Positions 1,339 through 51,654 of a stretch of DNA of 64,000 nt are shown piece by piece; position 1 is the stretch's first letter, and the number at the start of each line of letters is the position of its first letter. Below the pieces are notes generated by a model. That model saw only the letters and a program-made list of their open reading frames with translations, was not told the DNA's origin and searched no databases. Source of the stretch: Setoptus koraiensis. Taxonomy: Eukaryota; Animalia; Arthropoda. The DNA lies in the NCBI GenBank assembly GCA_048013815.1, contig CM106585.1, positions 20,646,001 through 20,710,000 on the forward strand. The letters are read 5' to 3'. Made by a program: the position numbers and the translations under genes.

Positions 1339-4300
1339 TCACCTTTTGTCGCTTAATAGATGGCTTGTTGTATTTAGTTTGAAGTATGCGATAAGCGACT
1401 CTTTGGAATTGCGCTCTTGTAACTTTTGCCAGAATCTCGATGATGTGTCGACGGATGTGTTCTGTTGTTGTGCAGTACTATTCATTGGTGTCTCTCTGTG
1501 GCTAAATCTTTGAGATCCATTGATTGTACAAAGACTGACTGTTTCGGGCAACTGATTATCTTGGGTGATTTGCAATTTTTGTGCATCGGGCAGTAGCCAC
1601 TTTTGTTCGAATTCCGACCAATTCGACAGACCTCTAACATGGCGAGTGAAACTCTTGAAGGGCTTATCTTTGACTTCCGCTTCCAGCGACGATATCGACG
1701 AGGAATCGTCCCTGTCAGGATCAAAGTTGTTGTTTTGCTCATCAATTACGCGTGCAAGGGGAGTCCGACAATTTACCGAACAGTATATAAATTCGGCTAG
1801 TTGCTTGAAGAATTTAATCTCTTTGCTTTGTTTGTAGATCTTTTCCGCCATGTCCGATTTATCGAGCTCATAATCGCGCGTCATTTCGCTTATTTCCTGT
1901 TCCAAATTTGCTATGCGCATTTCGCAATCTTTGATCACATCCGATTTGGTGGCAAGCTCCTGAGAGACGTCGCCGAAGGCTCTCACAAGCTTTAGGTCGT
2001 CGTCTTTCAATTTTGCCAGGGCCACGTTGAGCGCATAGTATTTTCTTTTGGCCATTTTGGCCCTCATGTGACGCCTCATCTTAATATCTTCGTCGTCGGC
2101 TCGTTCGCCGCCAACCAGTTGCGACTGAAGCTTGTTGAGTCTGTCCAGGGCCTTGGAGCGCATCTGATTGAGCGCGTCCGCCGTCGATAGTCTCTTTTGG
2201 GCCGAATGGTCAGTGGGGCCGGTTTGTTTGTCGTGGTCCGGCTCGCGGACGTCAGCGTTGTTATCAAACAGAAGCGTTTGGTCGCGTTGATTCACTTGAA
2301 TTAAATTGTCCAGTTCAGATTGTTTGTCAGTTGAGCGATGGTTGCCATCTATTGTGGCGGCCTGTTCCAGTTTTGCCAGCAGCGCCCTCAATCTGTCTAT
2401 CTCATTCTTGTAAGTCTCCAATATGGAATCCTTGGCGTCTTGATTAATAACGGGCTTGTTCTTGATACATTTGGCTCGGCGCGCAAATGCCAGCGTGCAT
2501 AGAGTCTCGTGGTAATCGTTTAAAGTGGGCGCTATACAGGCAATCATGAGCGTTTTGGCATTGCCGCCGAGAGAATCCTGTAATAGCCGGGTCAATTTTG
2601 AGTCTCTATAAGGCACATGTTGTGCATTGATGGCCACACTAGATATAACATTGCCCAGAGCGGACAGGGACAAGTTGATTTTGGTGGCCTCCTTTAGCCG
2701 GTCGCCAATGGCGCCCGTTCTGCTGAGCCGTTCGCTGCCGGCAAGATCGACTAGATGCAATTTGCCCCGTCTAATCTGTTGTTTGGCTGTTGCATTGTTT
2801 GCTTTTGTTGTGTCATGCTGGCCGTTTTGCAATAAGTTGCCGCCGCTCTCCTCCGTGCACCTCATCCTGTCTATGTAAACTGTCAATATAGAGTGGCTGC
2901 GAGACGAGTCTTTGGCCGCGTGTGTTCATGCAGCCAGATAAATAAAAGATAAAAAGATTGTTAGATTAGGCTTATTGCTGCCACTTGCACAGGGCCGAGC
3001 CAATAGGGCGAAATTGAGCACATGAATCAATCTCAGCTGAGCGTCTCACCCGAGTTCATGAGTGTGGCCGAAACGGAACGATTCTTGAGGCCTAATTTGA
3101 CAACGCGCAAACAATCGTCTAGAGTTTTGACGTTCACAATGGTGAGACCCTCGATGAGATTGTCGTGATCGGCCGCGTTGTTTGTTGACCTTTTCAAATC
3201 GAGCTTGACTTGATTGTTGTTGTTGCTGCTGTTGTTGCTGTTGTGTTTACCGTTAGTTGACAGCGATTGTTTGCCGGTGATGGCCGCCGTCGCCGCCGCC
3301 GTCATCGATGTCACCGTTGGCGCGGGCCAGCTGTGGCTGGCGCTGTGGCCCGCACCGACCGGCTTGGGCGCCGCCAACAAATCGTGTATCTCGTCATTGT
3401 AAATCTCAATGTACGAGGTGCTCAGCAGGAACTTGAAATCCTTTGTGGCCGCCACTGCCTCGAGAATGTGCTCAAAGGCTCGCTGAATGATGCCCTGGTT
3501 ACCTGAGTTACAGGTGAAATCGCCCTGCATAGTGAACGATTTTCCGCAACCGGTTTGTCCGTAGGCTGCTCGTGTCAATGGCACCGCCAGTGTCAATGGG
3601 TCAGTGGGCGATAAAAAATATTGTCAACACATGGGTTAGTTGTCACCATATTCATAGATAGTTACAGGCCGCGAGTGACAGGTTTTCAATGCTGGCTGGT
3701 AATTGGTTGGTGTGCCGTACCGAAAATGGTTCCGTTGTATCCCTCGAAGGCACTCTGTGCGGCGATTCAATGAACGGTGACTGGTGTTAATTTATAATTA
3801 GGCTGGTTTCAAGTTTGAGCTGGTCAGCGATTGCTTGGCGACACTCACCTCGACAATGGGAAAGGCCACCTCATTGTAGATTTGCTGATAGGTAGGCGTG
3901 CGTGGGACGGACAGAAAGAGTGTCAGTTGTTTATATATAATTATGATAATTAGAGCTGATTATTGTGGCTGATTGTTTGTTACCTCGGTGGTGGAATCAA
4001 GCGCATAAATGGCGTCAAATGTGAACGATCTGGCTGTTTGCTGTTGAGCTGGTTTTATGACCGTTATCTGGTTTGAATCGGGCAAAAACTGTACAGCTAT
4101 CTAAAGAGAGAATCACAATTCCCATTGTGACAAAGACACGACGATAGGACAATAGGCAAATAAGTGGACACAAGCGCCAACAAACAAGTTAGTTGGTCAC
4201 TAGTTAGTCTCTAGTGGCCTGAGCACTTGACTTGATTAGACTGAATTGGTTACCTGATTCTGGTCGCTCTGTAGCTCTCGTGGTGAGAGGGCCCTACAAC

Positions 4301-43400: not shown

Positions 43401-44932
43401 AACTTTGAATTTTGTTGGATAGACGAGCACGGATAGACGTGTGTGACGTGATTGCTTTTTGATTCCATGTCGCTAGCTCTGGCACCACAAGTTGTCAGTG
43501 TGCTGGCAGCGTGTTGTTCAGAGCCTCAGTTCAGAAACTATTTAAAATATACAGCTGGTAGTTATATACAGTTATAGTTGTATATTGCGGCAAGTGTCTC
43601 TGGGTAACTCTTTGAGTCTCGCCATATCACATTGCGTCACGAGTAAAAAGGTGACGTGTGTCGCACCCATCGAGCGCCATCAATCATCTTGTTGTTGGTA
43701 TATGCTTCTAACTGATAAGCTGCTCACCTTTTCTAATTATTCCTTTTGCTTGTTCACTTCAATTGTGTTCCGTTTGAGCTCGTTCGATTTGAGGATAATT
43801 CAAGTGAAACTGCGATAGCATTGATCGCAATCGTAACGCTGATGACGATGATTTCTCATACACGTTCCGTTATTGATCGCAGGCTCGCTGTTTATTGCTG
43901 TAATGTATTTGGCTGCGATATGTTGGCTGTTGCGATATACCGATATTTGGTCGCTATATATGTGTGGCTGCAACAGCTTTTTCTGCTTCGATGACCCCTG
44001 CTGAATCCTCAATAAATCTATCGGTGCCGCTCCGTTTCTATTGTCAGAGTGCTGTTGGCCACTTTGATCTACACCTGACCCACTGACCACACAAACTGAA
44101 CCTTTGAGCCTCGATTTCTGCTGCAGCTCTCTCTACTTACAACTAGCTTGTCGGTGAAGATTTCGTCGAGAGTTTCGGTGAGACTTTTAAACACTTCTTA
44201 TTCTTATTGTTTGATGCTTGCTTGCTTGCTTCCTGGTGCTACTCTTACAAACAACTATATCTGGCGGAAATGCTATAGCAAGTATCGCAACTGAACTACC
44301 GTCGATCCAACTCATTGGTTGTAAAAACTAAAATGAGCCAAGTAAGTTAGTGGCCAGCAAAGCGAACACGCCAACTTACACAAGTGAGTAGATGGGCGCC
44401 GATGCGCACTGGTACGCAATGGGGCCCCAATATTTGTCTGCCGCGCCATCTGGTTGGCTGGTTGGAGTCGCTATATTAACCGAACAAACAATCAATGATG
44501 GCAAGTCGGCAAGAGTCTCTGATTGACCATCGCCAATCAGCTCAAACTTGTCTGGGCGAACTGAGTGCCAACCACAAGACAAAATTTGACGAAATCGTCC
44601 CAGAGACAACAAATGGCTGCAATTGACAGGTTTTACCGGTCGAAAGCGCGTGAAATTCTTCACTATGCCAGGAATTACTTGCTAAAGATAATGAGCAGTC
44701 GATAATTCCATCTTGTTTCTTTAGGTTGGTCAACAGAGCTTGCTGATTTCCAACGACTTTTTGTCACAATATTCTAACGTCACTAAGTAACGTGTTGTGG
44801 ACAACTCAAACAAGTTCATCTTAAAATAACCTATCGCCAAAAATCCAGATGGACCTCATGATGGACTACAATCAATGAAAAATCTCGGTGATTAATGGAG
44901 AATACCATTAGCAATTTGCTACGCAATCATCA
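40481..44932. repeat. Segmental duplication, short copy B of 20441-31951
   Basis: Same blocks in the same order as copy A but lacking about 7 kb of internal sequence; shared identical alt-frame ORFs in the track (e.g. 30812-31102 vs 43800-44090). Confidence 0.95.
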
Positions 44933-45266: not shown

Positions 45267-46013
45267 ATGTCTACAACGATCAATCTTGGTCCACCGTCTG
45301 ACGGTGGGTCGCCTACTGAGCCCCTGGGGGAACTCGACGGCCAATTGGCTCAGATGGCAACGAACGTGGGCAAGAAATTTGACTTTAAGAATATGAATTT
45401 CAGATCCATGTTACATGAGAGATGGAGATCCATGAAAAGTTGGGGAAGTTTCTTTGATACAAGCCGTTGGACCATGCCCAACAGTGCTCTTCTGTGGTCT
45501 AGGAGATTATTGAAAAATTTGGATCATTTTCAGAGCAATTATTTCTGTGTTGTCTTTTTACTTATTGTCTATTGTATCTTGACCTCTCCATTGTTACTAA
45601 TAGCCATAACTGCAACCATGGTAGCCATGTAAGTTGCGTCATGACGAGCATCTATCCATTCGACAAAAAACTTGACAGGTTCTCTCATTATTAATTTTCT
45701 CTCAATTCATGCTATGTATCCTCATATATCAACCTCGTTCAGGTACATGATCGCTGCTAAGAACCAGGAATCTCCACTCAAGATAGCCGGCTTCTCGCCA
45801 TCTCTTTATCAACAATATATCGCTGTGGCCGTGATATCGATACCATTGTACTTATTGGCGGGTGCGCCATCGCTAGTATTTTGGGTAATAGGAGCATCAT
45901 TCTTCGTTATAGGCGTTCATGCCTCCATTTACGCAATAGAGTTATTAGACACCATGGATGACAACTTTATGATCAACACCCAGCCACAAACAAGTCCAGT
46001 TCAAGAGTTATAA
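45267..46013 (+). CDS. RABAC1: Prenylated Rab acceptor 1 (PRA1 family); exons 45267-45628 + 45743-46013, ~210 aa
   Basis: W-x-x-FFD...RLLKNLDHFQSNY...YCILTSPLLL and LFWVIGASFFVIGVHAS are PRA1 motifs. Intron gtaagt...ttcag (45629-45742) restores the frame. Confidence 0.9.
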
Positions 46014-46093: not shown

Positions 46094-47264
46094 CTAGGTT
46101 TTTCTCTTCTTTTGTTTCATTTGATCGAAGAATTCGTGAATATCTTCTTCTCTGACGATCTTTTTGCTGTCGGCAAACTTTCTTAAGTAGTCTGATAAAT
46201 CTTCCTTCAGCTCATTGTAACCATGTAGTGCCTCAACAACTGCAACTCTATTCATTCTGCCAAGTGCCGACAGACCCTGTTCATACTGAGACAGATGTGT
46301 GTTGTTGGCTTTACCTTGAGCTTCGTAGTGTGAAACAGTGTCAGTTTCATCAATTAAATATGTACATTCTTTCTCTTTGTAGAGCTCCAAGCACTTGTTG
46401 CAACGACATAATTTCTTCCTGTAATCACTAGAGGGAAAGAATATAGGCCCTTTCTGGTCCACATCTCCGAGCTGCTTGGTCCTTTTTAAAAGACTACATT
46501 CGCTCGATTGTTCATCAGTGGCTGTGGTGGTCTCTTCTTCGGTATAGCTGTAGAGAAAGTTAAGCTTACTGGCACACTGACCACAAATAAGTTCTTCAAA
46601 TTTATCTGGTACATTCTCGGTGGCTAAGTGATTCGAGTGATACCAATCTTCACAAGCAACACATTGCCACATATCCTCTTGAGTAACAGATTCATCTTCC
46701 TCCTCTGGTGGATAGGCCGTGTTGCAGGTGCAGTATTTCCCAGAGAAATTGTGATTGTATTTGTTCTTTTCATTTAGTGGTAACTTGAACTTCTCCAATT
46801 TACATTCAAAACCTTCCTTGAACTTACTATTACCACAATCACATCTGAAGTTTCGTTTGGTGTAAAGCTCATAAAGTTGGTGATTTTCATGACACTCTAG
46901 ACTGCAAGCCAGACAAATGGCTGCGACATTGTCGCTTCCATCTGAACATGTAGCACAAGAATATAGCGCCTGACGCGGTATGTAACCCTGTTTTGTTTAT
47001 ATGGAGAATAGAATTTTGATCATGGTTAGAATGAGTATGCTCAGCAAGAAAAGTACCCCTCACACGTGTCCAATTCAAAAAGCTTAGATCACTCACCTTA
47101 GAGTAGGTACAATTCTTCTCGTCACTGTTACCTAACACTGCAGAGGCCTCCTCTTGGAGTTTGTTTTCATCCTCGAGCACATCCAACATGGTGATTGTAT
47201 CTTCATCGTCGTCGATCTGGGGCGATCCGGGTCTGCTGTTATCTTGTTCGTTTTCCGAGGACAT
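46094..47264 (-). CDS. UBR7: UBR7 E3 ligase (UBR box + PHD); exons 47264-47097 + 46987-46094, ~353 aa
   Basis: ITMLDVLEDE...AVLGNSDEKNCTYSK|GYIPRQALYSCATC...ICLACSLECHENH...LYTKRNFRCDCG, then YNHNFSGKYCTC...MWQCVACEDWYH. Intron gtgagt...acag is phase 0. Confidence 0.93.
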
Positions 47265-47968
47265 ATTGCGATAAATAATGTTGATTAATTAATAAATCAA
47301 GGCCGCTGAGAATGTTGTTCTGCCTATGCCTCAATATTGTTATTATTACATGTGTATATCGTTTTGCAATGTATTCGATGGGGTCTTGCATGAAAAACTG
47401 AATGCGCAAGTTATCACATCAATGCGCTATAGTGGCCTGGGACTGCTATAGATTGCAAAATCTTTGTTTCAATTCAAATGTATAGGGTGCGCAACTAAGA
47501 TTGGTGTCCTTCTGATGTTACAACCTACGAGTTGATTTGCTCGAATAGAGTTTGCACCATGGACAAAAGAGGGCGGGAAGCAGAGCCTCCTCTTGGTGCT
47601 ATAGTGCAACAGAAAGAATTTGCGCCAAGTCTAAAATCAATTGAATTCCGCCTCCCATCTTTCGCAGAGAGGAGAGGATCTCCCCACGTCCCTTGATCAC
47701 AACAAAAATGGCAGTTTGAATTCCGCGCAAATTCACACTTGTGACGGTAGAATTTTGCTTTGTTCACGGCAGACAGTCGTCATCAAGATTTTTCTGGAGA
47801 AAAATACACTCCTACAATTACTACTTGCATAAATTATATACTTGTATTATCAGCTCGACTATTATAAATCCATATCTATATAAAAGAGACCCGTTTCAAC
47901 GATCATTGCTCGAGGACACGTTGATTTGATATTACATTGACCTGGTGGATTCTTTTAGCGAAGGAATC

Positions 47969-48559
47969 ATGAGCTCACACAATCCATTTATACCTTCCAG
48001 GTTCGGTCATCCAAGTTTCAATCCTGTGAATCAAAAATCTCGCTCAACCTCATTAGGTGGCCAAAAATCTGGACATAGAACCCCTGGCAGTCATCATCCT
48101 GATGGCTCTAAGTCTTCACGAAAAAAACAGAAACATGATGATAAAGTAAGCATACAACCCGTAGAGGAGGAGGATGGCGATGAATTCTTCAACAAGCATT
48201 TAGCTGCTGCCAGATTCAATAGAAATCACCGGCTTATACACGAATTGTTCAGTGATTACACGGTGACAGATTACAAAGCCAAGCAAGCTCCTGACAGGGT
48301 GCAGTTATTGAGGAAACAAGCTCAGACACTAGGCGGTCATCAAAAGAAGTTGGAGAGTGAATTAGCTCAAATTCATGAAAAATTTTATGCGAAAAAATCT
48401 AGGATTTTAAGCGACAGCAAAAGATTTAACGATGAATTACTATCTTTGCAAATGAAAACTAAACAGGAGCTTATGGCAATCAAACCAAATAATCAGACCC
48501 CTACACCACCAGCTACAACGCCCAATTCTACACCGACGCCCACACCAACACCGACGTAG
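47969..48559 (+). CDS. SMARCE1: SWI/SNF subunit BAF57/SMARCE1 (dalao/BAP111) homolog lacking the HMG box, ~196 aa, no CDS intron
   Basis: VSIQPVEE...KHLAAARFNRNHRLIHELFSD...RVQLLRKQAQTLGGHQKKLESEL...FNDEL aligns to the NHRLI and coiled-coil region of BAF57. First ATG is 47969; the track start at 47945 is GTG. Confidence 0.85.
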   Translation: MSSHNPFIPSRFGHPSFNPVNQKSRSTSLGGQKSGHRTPGSHHPDGSKSSRKKQKHDDKVSIQPVEEEDGDEFFNKHLAAARFNRNHRLIHELFSDYTVTDYKAKQAPDRVQLLRKQAQTLGGHQKKLESELAQIHEKFYAKKSRILSDSKRFNDELLSLQMKTKQELMAIKPNNQTPTPPATTPNSTPTPTPTPT

Positions 48560-48639
48560 TACTTTTGTGCTAGCACGCGAAGTCATCGATTGTAAATAAG
48601 AGATCTTAAAAAAATTGTATTAAAGAAATATTAATTGAT

Positions 48640-50337
48640 CTATCTCACAGGCCACAATGACTCGAGGAATGTCTTCCCATTTAAAATCTTCGTCGTGGCA
48701 ACTATAAATTCCCAATTGAAATCTTCTTGCTTAGATAGATATCTCAGAGCGGAAATTTCTGCAAACGTGCACCCTCCGACGAAGAAAACTAGTGCAGTCT
48801 CGTTTCGCCAGACAGTAGGCTGTTGAACTAGATTCTTGACCATGGTAATAGATATTGGGGCGTATCCGCCGTATACGTAAGAGAGATGGTCCGGATTGGA
48901 TTCGCTGACATCGTCTTTTATCAGATCTAGCTTGCTTTTCAGGTCACCATAACTGTTGGGATATGGATTATCATTGTGCAGCAAGAGAGAAGCCTTCTTT
49001 AGATCCTCCAATAACAAGAGAAAGTCATTGCCATAGTTTTGAATGATTTCCTTTTTATAATAGTCCAACACCTTTGGTTTAAGGCCGTTATTTGCAATCG
49101 ACTGTAGACATATGAGTCTAAGTATCGAGATTACCGACTCTTGTCTTAGTAACTTTGTTTCGATTTCAGGGATGACTTTGTATATTTTATCTTGTTGTAT
49201 TATGGTATGTTCGATTCTCAGGCCACAAATGAACTCTGGTCGAGAGATGTGTTCGTTAAGTAATTCTGCCATTGTCGTGTGATTGGATTGTGAATTTTTG
49301 GCTGCTTTGATATATGGCAACCTCTCAATCGTCTTCTTCAGTTCTAATGTTGTCTTCGTACCCTCTCTTTTGAGTTCGTCATGCTCAGCCTGTAGCTGAT
49401 GAGCTGAGGCACGTAAAGTTGTACCAACAGCGTTAATATGGCAATCTCTGAGTTGAGCAAACAATTCCTCAGATGATCTCAATTTAAGTTTGATAGTGGA
49501 CGGTTTATTAGTATCATTCTCTTCTTTATCCTTGTAGAATTTGGCGGCCGGCAATGAAATAGTTGCTTGCTCAATTCCGAAAACTTCATCGAGAAGTCCC
49601 TCATAGGTCAATTGGGTAAGAAGCATGGTAAAGAGATCTACTTTACGATCTATCACAATGAGATGTTGTATCTGAGGTGGTTGATCATTCTTGATCAAAG
49701 AATTTTTCTTTTTCATCAAGTCCGCAACCATTTTAGCAACTTTACCTTTGGCGGAAATTTTTGGTATAATACCGTAAATCTCTTGTAGATCTACAAGACT
49801 GTTGACTACGTTACGAACACAGGTGTAATCATCTTCTAGATGAATGTTGCGAAAAACCGATTCATTTTCCATTGATAGAATATCAGTATCTATCATGAAT
49901 AACTGTATGGGTAATTCATCAATGGCATTCAATTTGTCGAGATCCACCTTTAGTTGTTGCAGGTACCTCTCACAACTGATGCATTTTTGTGGTACAAATA
50001 CAAGACTAGTTTTGGGTAGCATGGATCGGTCTAATTTGAGTAAACTCTCTGCCAACATTGGCATCAAAGATAAATCTTTACGTATTAAATATATAACATG
50101 GTCAACTTTGTTTCCGATTGAGTTGATTGGACTCAGTTGATAGTTTTTCTTGACGAAATGTTTGCTCAATAAAGAATTGTCAGCTATGAGATCGAATGGT
50201 CGTATGAGGCTTTCGTCCCAGACAATAGCCTTTTCGTCGCCATCATATTTGTCTAAGAGGTCCAAGAATTTTCTTTGATAGACCTCCCTGACCAAGTTCA
50301 AATGTATTGAAGTTGTTGCACCGTTCGTTGTGTCCAT
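48640..50337 (-). CDS. VPS33A: Vacuolar protein sorting 33 (Sec1/Munc18 family), intronless, 565 aa
   Basis: FLDLLDKYDGDEKAIVWD, LIVIDRKVDLFTMLLTQLTYEGLLDEVFGI, LSYVYGGYAP, LVFFVGGCTFAEISALRYL are VPS33 motifs; A versus B paralog assignment is less certain. Confidence 0.9.
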   Translation of the reverse strand: MDTTNGATTSIHLNLVREVYQRKFLDLLDKYDGDEKAIVWDESLIRPFDLIADNSLLSKHFVKKNYQLSPINSIGNKVDHVIYLIRKDLSLMPMLAESLLKLDRSMLPKTSLVFVPQKCISCERYLQQLKVDLDKLNAIDELPIQLFMIDTDILSMENESVFRNIHLEDDYTCVRNVVNSLVDLQEIYGIIPKISAKGKVAKMVADLMKKKNSLIKNDQPPQIQHLIVIDRKVDLFTMLLTQLTYEGLLDEVFGIEQATISLPAAKFYKDKEENDTNKPSTIKLKLRSSEELFAQLRDCHINAVGTTLRASAHQLQAEHDELKREGTKTTLELKKTIERLPYIKAAKNSQSNHTTMAELLNEHISRPEFICGLRIEHTIIQQDKIYKVIPEIETKLLRQESVISILRLICLQSIANNGLKPKVLDYYKKEIIQNYGNDFLLLLEDLKKASLLLHNDNPYPNSYGDLKSKLDLIKDDVSESNPDHLSYVYGGYAPISITMVKNLVQQPTVWRNETALVFFVGGCTFAEISALRYLSKQEDFNWEFIVATTKILNGKTFLESLWPVR

Positions 50338-50940
50338 GGAGGGATGAATTCAATGAAAAATGGGGACCAGGTGTAATGGTACCAGGGACCAGGATATTGT
50401 ACAAATGAGCTTATTTCAACACGGAGACTTGAACATATCCGAAAAAGACTCAAGAGTTGGATCTCGCTGAAAAATCTGTCTTGCACAGGTGAGTTTTTGA
50501 GAAATTTTTTTTTCAATTCTAGATTCTTGAGGAGAATTCTGAAAAAGCCAGAAATAAATCAATGCAATCCTAATTGATTCCCAAAAATGATTAGTTTTTC
50601 GAGCCAGAAATCCCTGTTGGAGCTCAAATTTTAGTTGTTTTAGTTGTAAAACAACCAACCGCAACATCAAAATGACCTGGCTCAGCTGTTTTGTGCAGCG
50701 ATCTTAAAGGATGTCGATCAACATTTGCAATTTACCCCAGAAACAGCTGAGTGGGTCATGAAAAAGACAATCTGCTCGAGTTCTTTTGAAATAAACCAGA
50801 GGGTGCAGTCATTTTATTTTATCTACACTATTATTATATTGTTGTCTATTAGATGTAAAATTGATCAAGTAAGCTTATCCCTTGTTGGAATTAATTCAGA
50901 CTCGCACTCCATTGATACCAATAATAAACATACTTCAACA

Positions 50941-51654
50941 ATGGGCAAGAAGATGGGAATAAACACCAAAGCTGTCGAAGCTAGAGAGAGAAAGCAGGCT
51001 GTGAAGAATGCCAAAAGCGAGGCTTTACAAAAACAAAAAGAGGAACAATTTTGGAAAGACGACGACAAGCATGTCAATAGGAAGTTGGAAAGACAGAAAG
51101 AAAAAGAGAAGAAAGCGGCCGAGGAACGTTTGAGAAAACAAACCAACAAGTCCGCTTACGAAGAGGAGATGGCGGAACTAGCTAAGATTAGTGCTAAACC
51201 AACTAAAACCACTCTGCCTAAATCTACCATCGTCACCACAAATAAGACCCCAATACCTAAAGCTACTGTGGTTCAACCAGTGGCACCGAAAATTACTAGG
51301 TTCGAAATACAAACTAAGTTGGATGAAGAGCTGAGCAAAGAGCTTCGCGAGAAAGCCGACATAGAAACTATTTTGGATAAGCCGCTTGAACCAAACGTAA
51401 ATCATGAAGATGCAGGCGAAACTGCCACCACCATAGATGAGGCCTTGCAAGTCCTTAGTATATCAAGTGTTCCAACTGTGGATAAACATCCGGAAAAGCG
51501 TGTCAAGAATGCCTATTTAACTTATGAGAGTGTTCATTTGCCTAAACTCAAGAGCCAAAATCCTAATATGAGATTGTCACAATTGAAGCAAATACTGAAA
51601 AAACAATGGCAAAAGGCCCCCGAAAATCCATTCAATCAAGTGTTGAGACCTTAG
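50941..51654 (+). CDS. CCDC124: Coiled-coil domain-containing protein 124 (Lso2 homolog), intronless, ~237 aa
   Basis: MGKKMGINTKAVEARERK, FWKDDDK, LEPNVN, A-x-TIDEAL-x-VL, DKHPEKRVKNAY...ENPFNQ. The track's upstream TTG start is not used. Confidence 0.92.
   Translation: MGKKMGINTKAVEARERKQAVKNAKSEALQKQKEEQFWKDDDKHVNRKLERQKEKEKKAAEERLRKQTNKSAYEEEMAELAKISAKPTKTTLPKSTIVTTNKTPIPKATVVQPVAPKITRFEIQTKLDEELSKELREKADIETILDKPLEPNVNHEDAGETATTIDEALQVLSISSVPTVDKHPEKRVKNAYLTYESVHLPKLKSQNPNMRLSQLKQILKKQWQKAPENPFNQVLRP

What the first reader, a model, noticed from the sequence alone, without database searches (positions are those of the whole stretch)
47969..48559. BAF57/SMARCE1 homolog with the HMG box deleted
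Seen: the N-terminal NPF...GHPSFNP motif is followed by only ~40 residues before SIQP...RNHRLI, in one uninterrupted ORF with no room for the ~100 aa PKPP-HMG segment; the C-terminal acidic tail is also short. Known: the HMG box is the defining DNA-binding module of animal BAF57/dalao, while the NHRLI/coiled-coil region mediates complex assembly. Inference: a stripped-down SWI/SNF subunit (lineage-specific complex simplification) or an HMG-less paralog acting as a variant or dominant-negative subunit.
Basis: partly seen in the sequence, partly recalled or inferred. Interest (0 to 1): 0.72.

Follow-up and report, generated by a model that had tools for sequence, protein, structure and literature searches.

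The report
Mite BAF57 gene without HMG box
This small-genome mite makes its version of BAF57, a standard part of the SWI/SNF chromatin-remodelling machine, without the DNA-gripping HMG box; spider mites, flat mites and earth mites share the loss, which looks like an old exon-skipped messenger form made permanent.

Summary
Window 47969-48559(+) is one uninterrupted 196-aa ORF. Residues 50-160 match human SMARCE1/BAF57 residues 161-273 (E 2e-21), the part resolved in the human BAF base module. No HMG box is present.

The gene is real and in use:
- dN/dS is 0.026 against a 96%-identical relative.
- A transcript contig from a run with spliced contigs elsewhere lies colinear on 47799-48544. It crosses an in-frame stop at 47927, so no upstream exon can add an HMG box.

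The loss is not private to this genome:
- Tetranychus urticae (annotated "mucin-17-like"), Brevipalpus obovatus, Halotydeus destructor and about a dozen unnamed lineages show the same architecture within a continuous exon.
- Dinothrombium, ticks, spiders and insects keep the box.

In Dinothrombium the box lies on two small exons. The HMG-less genes join the flanking exons exactly as HMG-skipped mRNA isoforms do in an unnamed arthropod and a millipede; tick isoforms skip only the first of these exons.

Best reading: an orthologous, functional, structural-only BAF57, with the exon-skipped form fixed in the genome.

Not tested: whether a second, HMG-bearing copy lies elsewhere in this genome, and whether the loss happened once or several times.

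Rating: new variant of a known kind, of moderate interest.

The parts
47799..47968 (+). Minimum 5' UTR, unspliced. It contains the in-frame stop TGA at 47927-47929 and the acceptor-like 'ttttag' at 47953-47958, which is not used in the transcript contig.
   Evidence: The run X5 contig lies colinear on 47799-48544 with 0 differences and no joint. Upstream codons were read.
47969..48559 (+). Complete single-exon CDS of the HMG-less BAF57/SMARCE1 orthologue (196 aa plus stop).
   Evidence: dN/dS is 0.026 against L005:319-909.
47981..48025 (+). N-terminal arthropod BAF57 motif NPFIPSRFGHPSFNP (aa 5-19). It is kept although the HMG box is gone, and is predicted disordered.
   Evidence: The motif aligns with SPFVPSPHGHPSF(N/S)P of the millipede, velvet-mite and unnamed-arthropod BAF57; the tick row aligns only weakly over this stretch. 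Ten positions in aa 6-18 (P6, I8-P15, N18) are invariant in A1. pLDDT is below 60.
48107..48133 (+). Junction region SKSSRK|KQK (aa 47-55). SRK is the last remnant of the HMG box's first strand (KPLMPYMRYSRK). The roughly 85-105 residues of HMG body and post-HMG linker that follow it in canonical BAF57 are missing between codons 52 and 53 (48124|48125).
   Evidence: Alignments A2 and A4. Exon map of Dinothrombium L008.
48146..48262 (+). VSIQP, an acidic patch and the NHRLI helix (aa 60-98; NHRLI itself at 48224-48238).
   Evidence: phmmer against 6lth_Q. AF2 helix 70-98. Invariant columns in A1 and A2.
48287..48490 (+). Long coiled-coil helix (aa 107-174). It is the counterpart of the BAF57 helix that sits in the BAF base module.
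   Evidence: The AF2 helix spans aa 107-174, and the 10-residue blocks for aa 111-160 average pLDDT 90-97. The only Foldseek PDB hit is 6lth_Q: prob 0.99, 47% identity, 102 of 105 columns.
48491..48556 (+). Short Thr/Pro-rich tail in place of the long acidic tail of canonical BAF57.
   Evidence: Composition. The tail is absent or different in clade B relatives, which instead end in a conserved EVRLVLEK..SVAN segment.
48595..48624 (+). Candidate poly(A) signals AATAAG (48595) and ATTAAA (48619), just before the convergent Sec1/VPS33 gene ends at 48640.
   Evidence: Pattern search. These are inferences and no 3' end was mapped.

Best explanation
This is the mite's orthologue of BAF57/SMARCE1 (Drosophila BAP111), reduced to the part that builds the complex.

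What is kept: (i) a short N-terminal linear motif, (ii) the NHRLI helix, and (iii) the long coiled-coil helix.

What is lost: the HMG box, so the subunit can no longer bind DNA through one. DNA contact of the mite SWI/SNF complex must then come from other subunits. This last step is inferred.

The loss is genomic and old. It is shared with spider mites, flat mites, earth mites and many unnamed relatives.

Its junction equals a join of the exon ending ...RYSRK to the exon starting (G/S)xQxPQKxDGKVSIQ. That is the product of skipping the two small HMG exons, a splice form annotated or assembled in an unnamed arthropod (RefSeq and Logan pairs) and in a millipede whose genome still holds the HMG exons; tick isoforms skip only the first of them.

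The most likely history is therefore that a pre-existing HMG-skipped isoform became the only form. The route could be deletion of the two cassette exons with their introns, or conversion by a cDNA of the skipped mRNA. This history is inferred.
For: Homology:
- phmmer against PDB hits only human SMARCE1, E 2.1e-21, covering chain residues 161-273.
- The only Foldseek hit of the AF2 model is 6lth_Q, prob 0.99.
- PMC9170682 states that cryo-EM resolves only BAF57 residues 175-276 or 220-298. It also states that removing the HMG domain does not stop in-vitro remodelling, and that fungal Ssr4 is an HMG-less SMARCE.

No HMG box:
- Pfam finds none in the protein or in upstream ORFs.
- A BAF57-type HMG profile finds none in any frame of the window or in the flanks of five orthologous loci.

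Functional gene:
- dN/dS is 0.026 at dS 0.58 against L005, and 0.13 within clade B.

Expression and structure:
- Run X5 carries spliced contigs in two neighbouring genes (45628^45743 GT..AG; 46986^47096), so it is RNA-derived.
- Its contig on 47799-48544 is colinear and includes the in-frame stop at 47927.

Distribution:
- The profile search of 1.84 billion representatives gave 417 hits. The top 11 clusters listed (P0001, P0006-P0015) plus P0032 and P0034 run from the N-terminal motif straight to NHRLI.
- Pfam finds no HMG in them.
- Named members are T. urticae XP_015794913.1, B. obovatus XP_074593797.1 and H. destructor KAI1289562.1.
- In T. urticae, Brevipalpus and Halotydeus the junction lies inside one continuous exon.

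HMG kept elsewhere:
- Dinothrombium tinctorium RWS09242.1, RWS21294.1, Rhipicephalus, spiders and insects keep it.

Exon logic:
- In Dinothrombium the HMG body sits on two exons between ...RYSRK and GFQSPQKQ.... The layout is the same in a millipede.
- Skipped isoforms with the same junction are XP_067139168.1 against XP_067139167.1, and P0184 against P0185. Tick isoforms skip the first HMG exon only.
Against: - The rest of this genome could not be searched, so a second HMG-bearing BAF57 copy is not excluded.
- No direct evidence shows that the protein sits in a SWI/SNF complex.
- The window clade is a very long branch (about 40% identity to other mites) and its place in the tree is unresolved.
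- In the window protein only 'SRK' remains of the junction signature, so identity of its breakpoint with that of Tetranychus is inferred from alignment.
- Transcript evidence is from assembled contigs, which can hide rare splice forms.
- The cDNA-conversion idea fits poorly with the 3' introns that remain in Tetranychus and Brevipalpus while the 5' introns are gone.
Confidence: 0.82

Rival explanations
1. It is an HMG-less paralogue that coexists with an intact, HMG-bearing BAF57 elsewhere in the genome. It would act as a variant or competing (dominant-negative-like) subunit.
For: The whole genome was not searchable. T. urticae has a second, adjacent copy of its HMG-less gene, so duplication does occur in this family. 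HMG-skipped isoforms coexist with full ones in other arthropods, so two forms in one cell is a natural state.
Against: All the mite-clade clusters found lack the box (34 proteins, including isoforms and near-duplicates, show the motif-to-NHRLI architecture). No HMG+NHRLI protein grouped with the window clade in the profile search. dN/dS of 0.026 is typical of an essential single-copy subunit. Three named mite genomes annotate only the short form among the hits seen.
Confidence: 0.08
2. The HMG box is supplied by an unseen upstream or alternative exon spliced to the acceptor-like site at 47958.
For: A 'ttttag' acceptor-like sequence lies 11 nt before the ATG. Assembled contigs can miss rare isoforms.
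Against: The transcript contig is colinear from 47799 and crosses the in-frame stop at 47927. The 700-nt intergenic space up to the divergent neighbour holds no HMG-like ORF. In L001 only 409 nt separate the gene from the upstream RMC1 gene. In Tetranychus, Brevipalpus and Halotydeus the motif-to-NHRLI stretch is one exon.
Confidence: 0.02
3. It is a decaying fragment or retro-pseudogene of BAF57 with no function.
For: It is intronless, short, and lacks two of the canonical regions (HMG box and acidic tail).
Against: The frame is intact in at least 11 lineages. dN/dS is 0.026 with 50 synonymous against 7 non-synonymous differences. It is transcribed. The N-terminal motif and the NHRLI/coiled-coil columns are invariant.
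Confidence: 0.01

Closest known systems
Animal BAF57 / SMARCE1 (Drosophila BAP111/dalao; human chain Q of PDB 6LTH)
   Same: The NHRLI helix and long coiled coil match (E 2e-21; 47% identity over the 105 residues resolved in the BAF base module). The arthropod N-terminal motif is present. A remnant of the first HMG strand remains in mite relatives.
   Different: There is no HMG box and no acidic C-terminal tail. The protein is 196 aa, against 411 in human and about 500-750 in arthropods, and it is coded by a single exon.
HMG-skipped splice isoforms of arthropod BAF57 (XP_067139168.1 against XP_067139167.1; Logan P0184 against P0185; Chamberlinius GAB6031942-44; tick isoforms XP_049272299.1 and others)
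   Same: In XP_067139168.1, P0184 and the Chamberlinius isoforms the protein junction is the same: ...RYSRK joined directly to the linker before ...DGKVSIQP....
   Different: Those are mRNA variants of genes that still hold the HMG exons, as shown for the millipede locus L010. In the mites the exons are gone from the DNA. The tick isoforms skip only the first HMG exon.
Fungal Ssr4 (SMARCE family, S. pombe SWI/SNF and RSC)
   Same: It is a SMARCE-family subunit that has the NHRLI region and no HMG box (PMC9170682).
   Different: Ssr4 has an N-terminal DUF1750 domain, which Pfam does not find here. Ssr4's state is a deep fungal trait, whereas the mite state is a secondary loss within animals.
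Engineered BAF57 lacking the HMG domain (the study that PMC9170682 cites as its reference 24)
   Same: It is the same architecture in principle. According to that citation, the complex still remodels chromatin in vitro.
   Different: That is a laboratory construct in mammalian cells. Here the HMG-less form is natural and kept by selection.

Membership tests
SMARCE family (BAF57/BAP111/Ssr4) | NHRLI domain followed by the coiled-coil (KLCC) helix, homologous to BAF57 residues about 175-276 | tested here: met
   phmmer against PDB: E 2.1e-21, query 50-160 against SMARCE1 161-273. AF2 helices 70-98 and 107-174. Foldseek 6lth_Q prob 0.99.
Canonical animal BAF57 | HMG box (PF00505) between the Pro-rich N-terminus and the NHRLI region | tested here: not met
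   No Pfam hit. No hit of a BAF57-type HMG profile in the protein or in any frame of the window. The motif-to-NHRLI distance is about 80 residues against a median of 176.
Canonical animal BAF57 | Acidic C-terminal tail | tested here: not met
   The last 30 residues are Thr/Pro-rich with one D/E.
Canonical animal BAF57 (arthropod type) | N-terminal motif (S/N)PF(V/I)xSxHGHPSFNP and descent from the arthropod BAF57 gene | tested here: met
   Alignments A2 and A4. The nearest relatives in a search of 1.84 billion proteins are arthropod BAF57 proteins. The junction equals the exon 2-exon 5 join of the Dinothrombium gene.
Canonical animal BAF57 | Single orthologue in the genome (no intact second copy) | not testable with these tools
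   Only the 64-kb window and fetched loci can be searched. No whole-genome tblastn is available.
SMARCE family | Physical incorporation into the SWI/SNF base module with SMARCC (Moira) | not testable with these tools
   No multimer prediction or biochemistry is available here. This is inferred from retention of exactly the resolved region.
Fungal Ssr4 | N-terminal Ssr4/DUF1750 domain | tested here: not met
   The Pfam scan at E up to 1 lists no such domain.

The most novel reading that the evidence does not exclude
An ancient, regulated HMG-skipped isoform of BAF57 was hard-wired into the genome in several acariform mite lineages. This may have happened more than once, because the isoform already existed, and perhaps through recombination with cDNA of the skipped mRNA. 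Whole animal clades would then run SWI/SNF remodelling with a BAF57 that cannot bind DNA. The conserved N-terminal motif, not the HMG box, would be the indispensable non-structural element of the subunit. The presence or absence of the box would also be a rare-genomic-change marker for the disputed placement of small-genome mites.
Probability: 0.35. Interest if true: 0.6.

Novelty: new variant of a known kind. Interest (0 to 1): 0.45.

Why it matters
BAF57 has been defined by its HMG box. Yet structures resolve only its NHRLI/coiled-coil part, and the box's role in vivo is still debated.

A set of animal lineages has lived for a long time with an HMG-less BAF57 under strong purifying selection. 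This is a natural deletion experiment. It indicates that the structural role and the N-terminal motif are the conserved core.

It also gives tractable species, such as Tetranychus urticae, in which to ask how SWI/SNF targets DNA without this box.

The exact match between the genomic junction and an alternative-splice junction is a clean example of an isoform becoming the gene. That pattern may help explain domain losses in miniaturised genomes.

On the practical side, the T. urticae orthologue is mis-named "mucin-17-like" and the Brevipalpus one is "uncharacterized".

Tried and rejected
- **Upstream HMG exon:** Pfam on all + strand ORFs of at least 40 aa between the neighbouring gene and the ATG found nothing. 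An HMG-profile scan of all six frames of the window and of the orthologous loci also found nothing. Rejected.
- **RNA runs:** no run is recorded as RNA. X5 was accepted as RNA-derived only after two spliced joints were found in neighbouring genes.
- **Bacterial-type promoter/terminator scan:** irrelevant for a eukaryote and not used.
- **Single versus multiple loss:** the ML tree of the NHRLI/coiled-coil region leaves the window clade on a long branch. A single clade of all HMG-less genes is neither shown nor rejected (p-AU 0.24). A first tree was made on unaligned cuts and is discarded.
- **Species names for the Logan runs:** the SRR numbers are in no paper held.
- **Sarcoptiform mites (house-dust and scabies mites):** no named hit was seen in the two capped word searches, so their state is unknown.
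- **Fungal Ssr4 membership:** no DUF1750 domain.
- **Literature:** no paper in the held library links BAF57/BAP111 with mites or reports an HMG-less animal BAF57 gene. The library is incomplete, so this is not proof of novelty.

Full report
**1. What is at the coordinates**

Window 47969-48559(+) is a single ORF of 196 codons plus a stop. The in-frame codon series upstream of the ATG reaches TGA at 47927-47929.

The protein has these parts:
- NPFIPSRFGHPSFNP at aa 5-19.
- A low-complexity basic stretch ending in SKSSRK (aa 47-52).
- KQKHDDKVSIQP, an acidic patch, and FNRNHRLI, with NHRLI at aa 86-90.
- A long heptad-like region up to about aa 174.
- A Thr/Pro-rich tail with a single acidic residue in the last 30.

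**2. Is it BAF57, and is the HMG box really missing?**

- phmmer against all PDB chains returns one protein only, human SMARCE1 (6lth_Q). The E-value is 2.1e-21, aligning aa 50-160 to SMARCE1 161-273.
- Pfam finds no HMG box and nothing else significant in the protein.
- An AlphaFold2 model built on alignment A2 gives a disordered N-terminus (aa 1-69) and helices at 70-98 and 107-174. The 10-residue blocks for aa 111-160 average pLDDT 90-97.
- Foldseek's only PDB match is again 6lth_Q, with prob 0.99, 47% identity and 102 of the 105 resolved residues aligned.
- PMC9170682 notes that cryo-EM resolves only BAF57 residues 175-276 or 220-298. It treats the NHRLI domain as the reliable marker of the SMARCE family. 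It also says that the HMG domain is not needed for in-vitro remodelling and that fungal Ssr4 is an HMG-less SMARCE.

The window protein thus keeps almost exactly the part that is structured inside the complex.

**3. Could the box be supplied by another exon?**

- The space between the divergent upstream gene (its ATG is at 47264 on the minus strand) and this ATG is about 700 nt. Its + strand ORFs have no HMG signal.
- A BAF57-type HMG profile was built from four Pfam-confirmed boxes. It finds nothing in any frame of the whole 64-kb window. The best hit is the unrelated CCDC124 gene at E 0.49.
- Of the four public runs laid on the region, X5 shows a GT..AG joint at 45628^45743 in the PRA1 gene. 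A second joint at 46986^47096 was recovered from a 15-letter loose end, so X5 is RNA-derived.
- The X5 contig on this gene covers 47799-48544 with no difference and no joint. The mRNA is therefore colinear with the genome, carries at least 170 nt of 5' UTR, and includes the in-frame stop.
- A contig of another study (X1) lies on 48155-48355.
- Contigs can hide rare isoforms, so this is strong evidence but not absolute.

**4. Is the gene under selection?**

- Against the 96%-identical orthologue on L005, which has the same neighbours (Sec1/VPS33 and CCDC124), there are 50 synonymous and 7 non-synonymous differences. This gives dS 0.58, dN 0.015 and dN/dS 0.026.
- The 318 nt upstream align at only 191 of 332 columns.
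- Within a second clade (L001 against L002) dN/dS is 0.13.

The gene is functional.

**5. How wide is the HMG-less state?**

- The word search found five short relatives, all HMG-less.
- A profile search of 1.84 billion representative proteins gave 417 hits. The top 11 clusters listed (P0001, P0006-P0015) plus P0032 and P0034 align from the N-terminal motif (protein residue 1-8) straight through NHRLI. Pfam finds no HMG in them.
- Named members are Tetranychus urticae XP_015794913.1 ("mucin-17-like", T1JWH4), Brevipalpus obovatus XP_074593797.1 ("uncharacterized") and Halotydeus destructor KAI1289562.1. The last was identified through assembly GCA_022750525.1 and PMC10107102.
- In all three the motif-to-NHRLI stretch lies in one continuous exon: aa 1-359, aa 1-213 and the whole gene, respectively.
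- In contrast, Dinothrombium tinctorium RWS09242.1 (GCA_003675995.1, PMC10107102) keeps the box. So do RWS21294.1, Rhipicephalus, several spiders, horseshoe crab, centipede and insects.
- Across all fetched proteins, 202 have a full box and 34 show the motif-to-NHRLI architecture without it.

**6. The shape of the deletion**

- Mites such as P0013 and T. urticae still read ...PKPPDKPxxxYxRY(S/G)RK, which is the first strand of the HMG box. They then continue directly with G(F/L)QSPQKQxDGKVSIQG.
- In Dinothrombium the exon ending ...RYSRK (to about L008:3223) is followed by two small exons that encode the HMG helices (about 3401-3535 and 3597-3668). Next comes the exon starting GFQSPQKQ (about 3886).
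- The millipede Chamberlinius has the same layout.
- Messenger forms that skip these exons exist where the exons are kept. Examples are the RefSeq pair XP_067139167.1/XP_067139168.1 and the Logan pair P0185/P0184. All three annotated millipede isoforms do the same. Tick isoforms skip the first HMG exon only.
- The HMG-less mite genes are therefore the genomic equivalent of the exon-skipped mRNA.
- In the window protein the signature has eroded to ...SSRK|KQKHDDKVSIQP.

That the loss arose by fixation of this isoform is an inference. Whether the route was deletion of the cassette exons or conversion by a cDNA is open. The 3' introns that remain in Tetranychus and Brevipalpus do not fit a simple 3'-biased cDNA model.

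**7. One loss or several; which organism**

- An ML tree of the NHRLI/coiled-coil region groups the trombidiform mites, both with and without the box. It leaves the window clade plus clade B (10 sequences) on a very long branch.
- Forcing all HMG-less genes into one clade costs 5.1 log-likelihood units (p-AU 0.24). This is not rejected and not shown.
- Other agents' unchecked notes call this a small, "gall-mite-type" genome with many domain losses. I did not test the taxon beyond the BAF57 relationships.

**8. How it most likely works**

- *Shown:* homology of aa 50-160 to the region of BAF57 resolved in the BAF base module; absence of the HMG box; expression; purifying selection.
- *Inferred:* the protein enters the mite BAP/PBAP base module through its NHRLI helix and coiled coil, by analogy with human BAF57. 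It serves as a structural subunit without DNA binding of its own. The strictly conserved N-terminal motif provides a still unknown, HMG-independent contact. DNA contact is left to other subunits.

**9. Limits**

- The rest of the genome could not be searched, so a second HMG-bearing copy remains possible. I put this at about 8%.
- The state of sarcoptiform mites is unknown.

**10. Verdict**

The "stripped-down subunit" reading is supported and extended to a mite-wide, exon-skip-shaped loss. This is a new variant of a known kind and of moderate interest.

Noticed in passing
L006:12757-14307 (-) and L006:637-1657 (+) (Tetranychus urticae HE587302.1): T. urticae has a second, inverted copy of its HMG-less BAF57-like gene about 4.5 kb downstream of the first. 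It is 83% identical over aa 169-732, and its N-terminus lies beyond the locus. A two-HMG-box HMGB-like gene sits 4.3 kb upstream of the first copy.
   Followed up: partly
L010:3060-3187 and 3353-3427 (Chamberlinius hualienensis): The millipede genome keeps both HMG exons in the intron, but all three annotated isoforms skip them. The first HMG exon aligns in two different frames (3060-3116 and 3101-3187), which suggests a frameshift or an assembly error.
   Followed up: partly
L008:3533-3896 (Dinothrombium tinctorium NCKU01002600.1): The deposited model RWS09242.1 appears to read through an intron (NVISFFTLRVAYFGF...) and omits the exon for HMG helix 3, which is present in the DNA at about 3597-3668.
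   Followed up: partly
window 45267-46013 (+): This PRA1-family gene is in two exons. The 114-nt GT..AG intron at 45629-45742 is confirmed by a spliced contig of run X5.
   Followed up: yes
window 46094-47264 (-): This divergent neighbour has a PHD-like Cys/His region and only a weak Pfam hit. A 15-letter loose end in X5 places an intron of about 109 nt at about 46987-47095.
   Followed up: partly
window 50725-51654 (+): This CCDC124 gene has a C-terminal domain that also scores as an HMG_box in Pfam (E 3.2e-07). The same is seen in the orthologue on L005. It is ordinary for this family and unrelated to the missing BAF57 box.
   Followed up: no
L001:5001-5780, L002:2708-3448 (clade B relatives): Clade B orthologues (246-280 aa) end in a conserved segment EVRLVLEK..SVAN, which the window protein lacks and replaces with a Thr/Pro-rich tail. 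Their gene neighbours (RMC1 upstream, PAP2 downstream) also differ from those in the window.
   Followed up: no
window 44758-44918: Runs X2 and X3 carry several alternative short contigs with many differences over this stretch, which suggests a polymorphic or repeated segment about 3 kb upstream of the finding.
   Followed up: no
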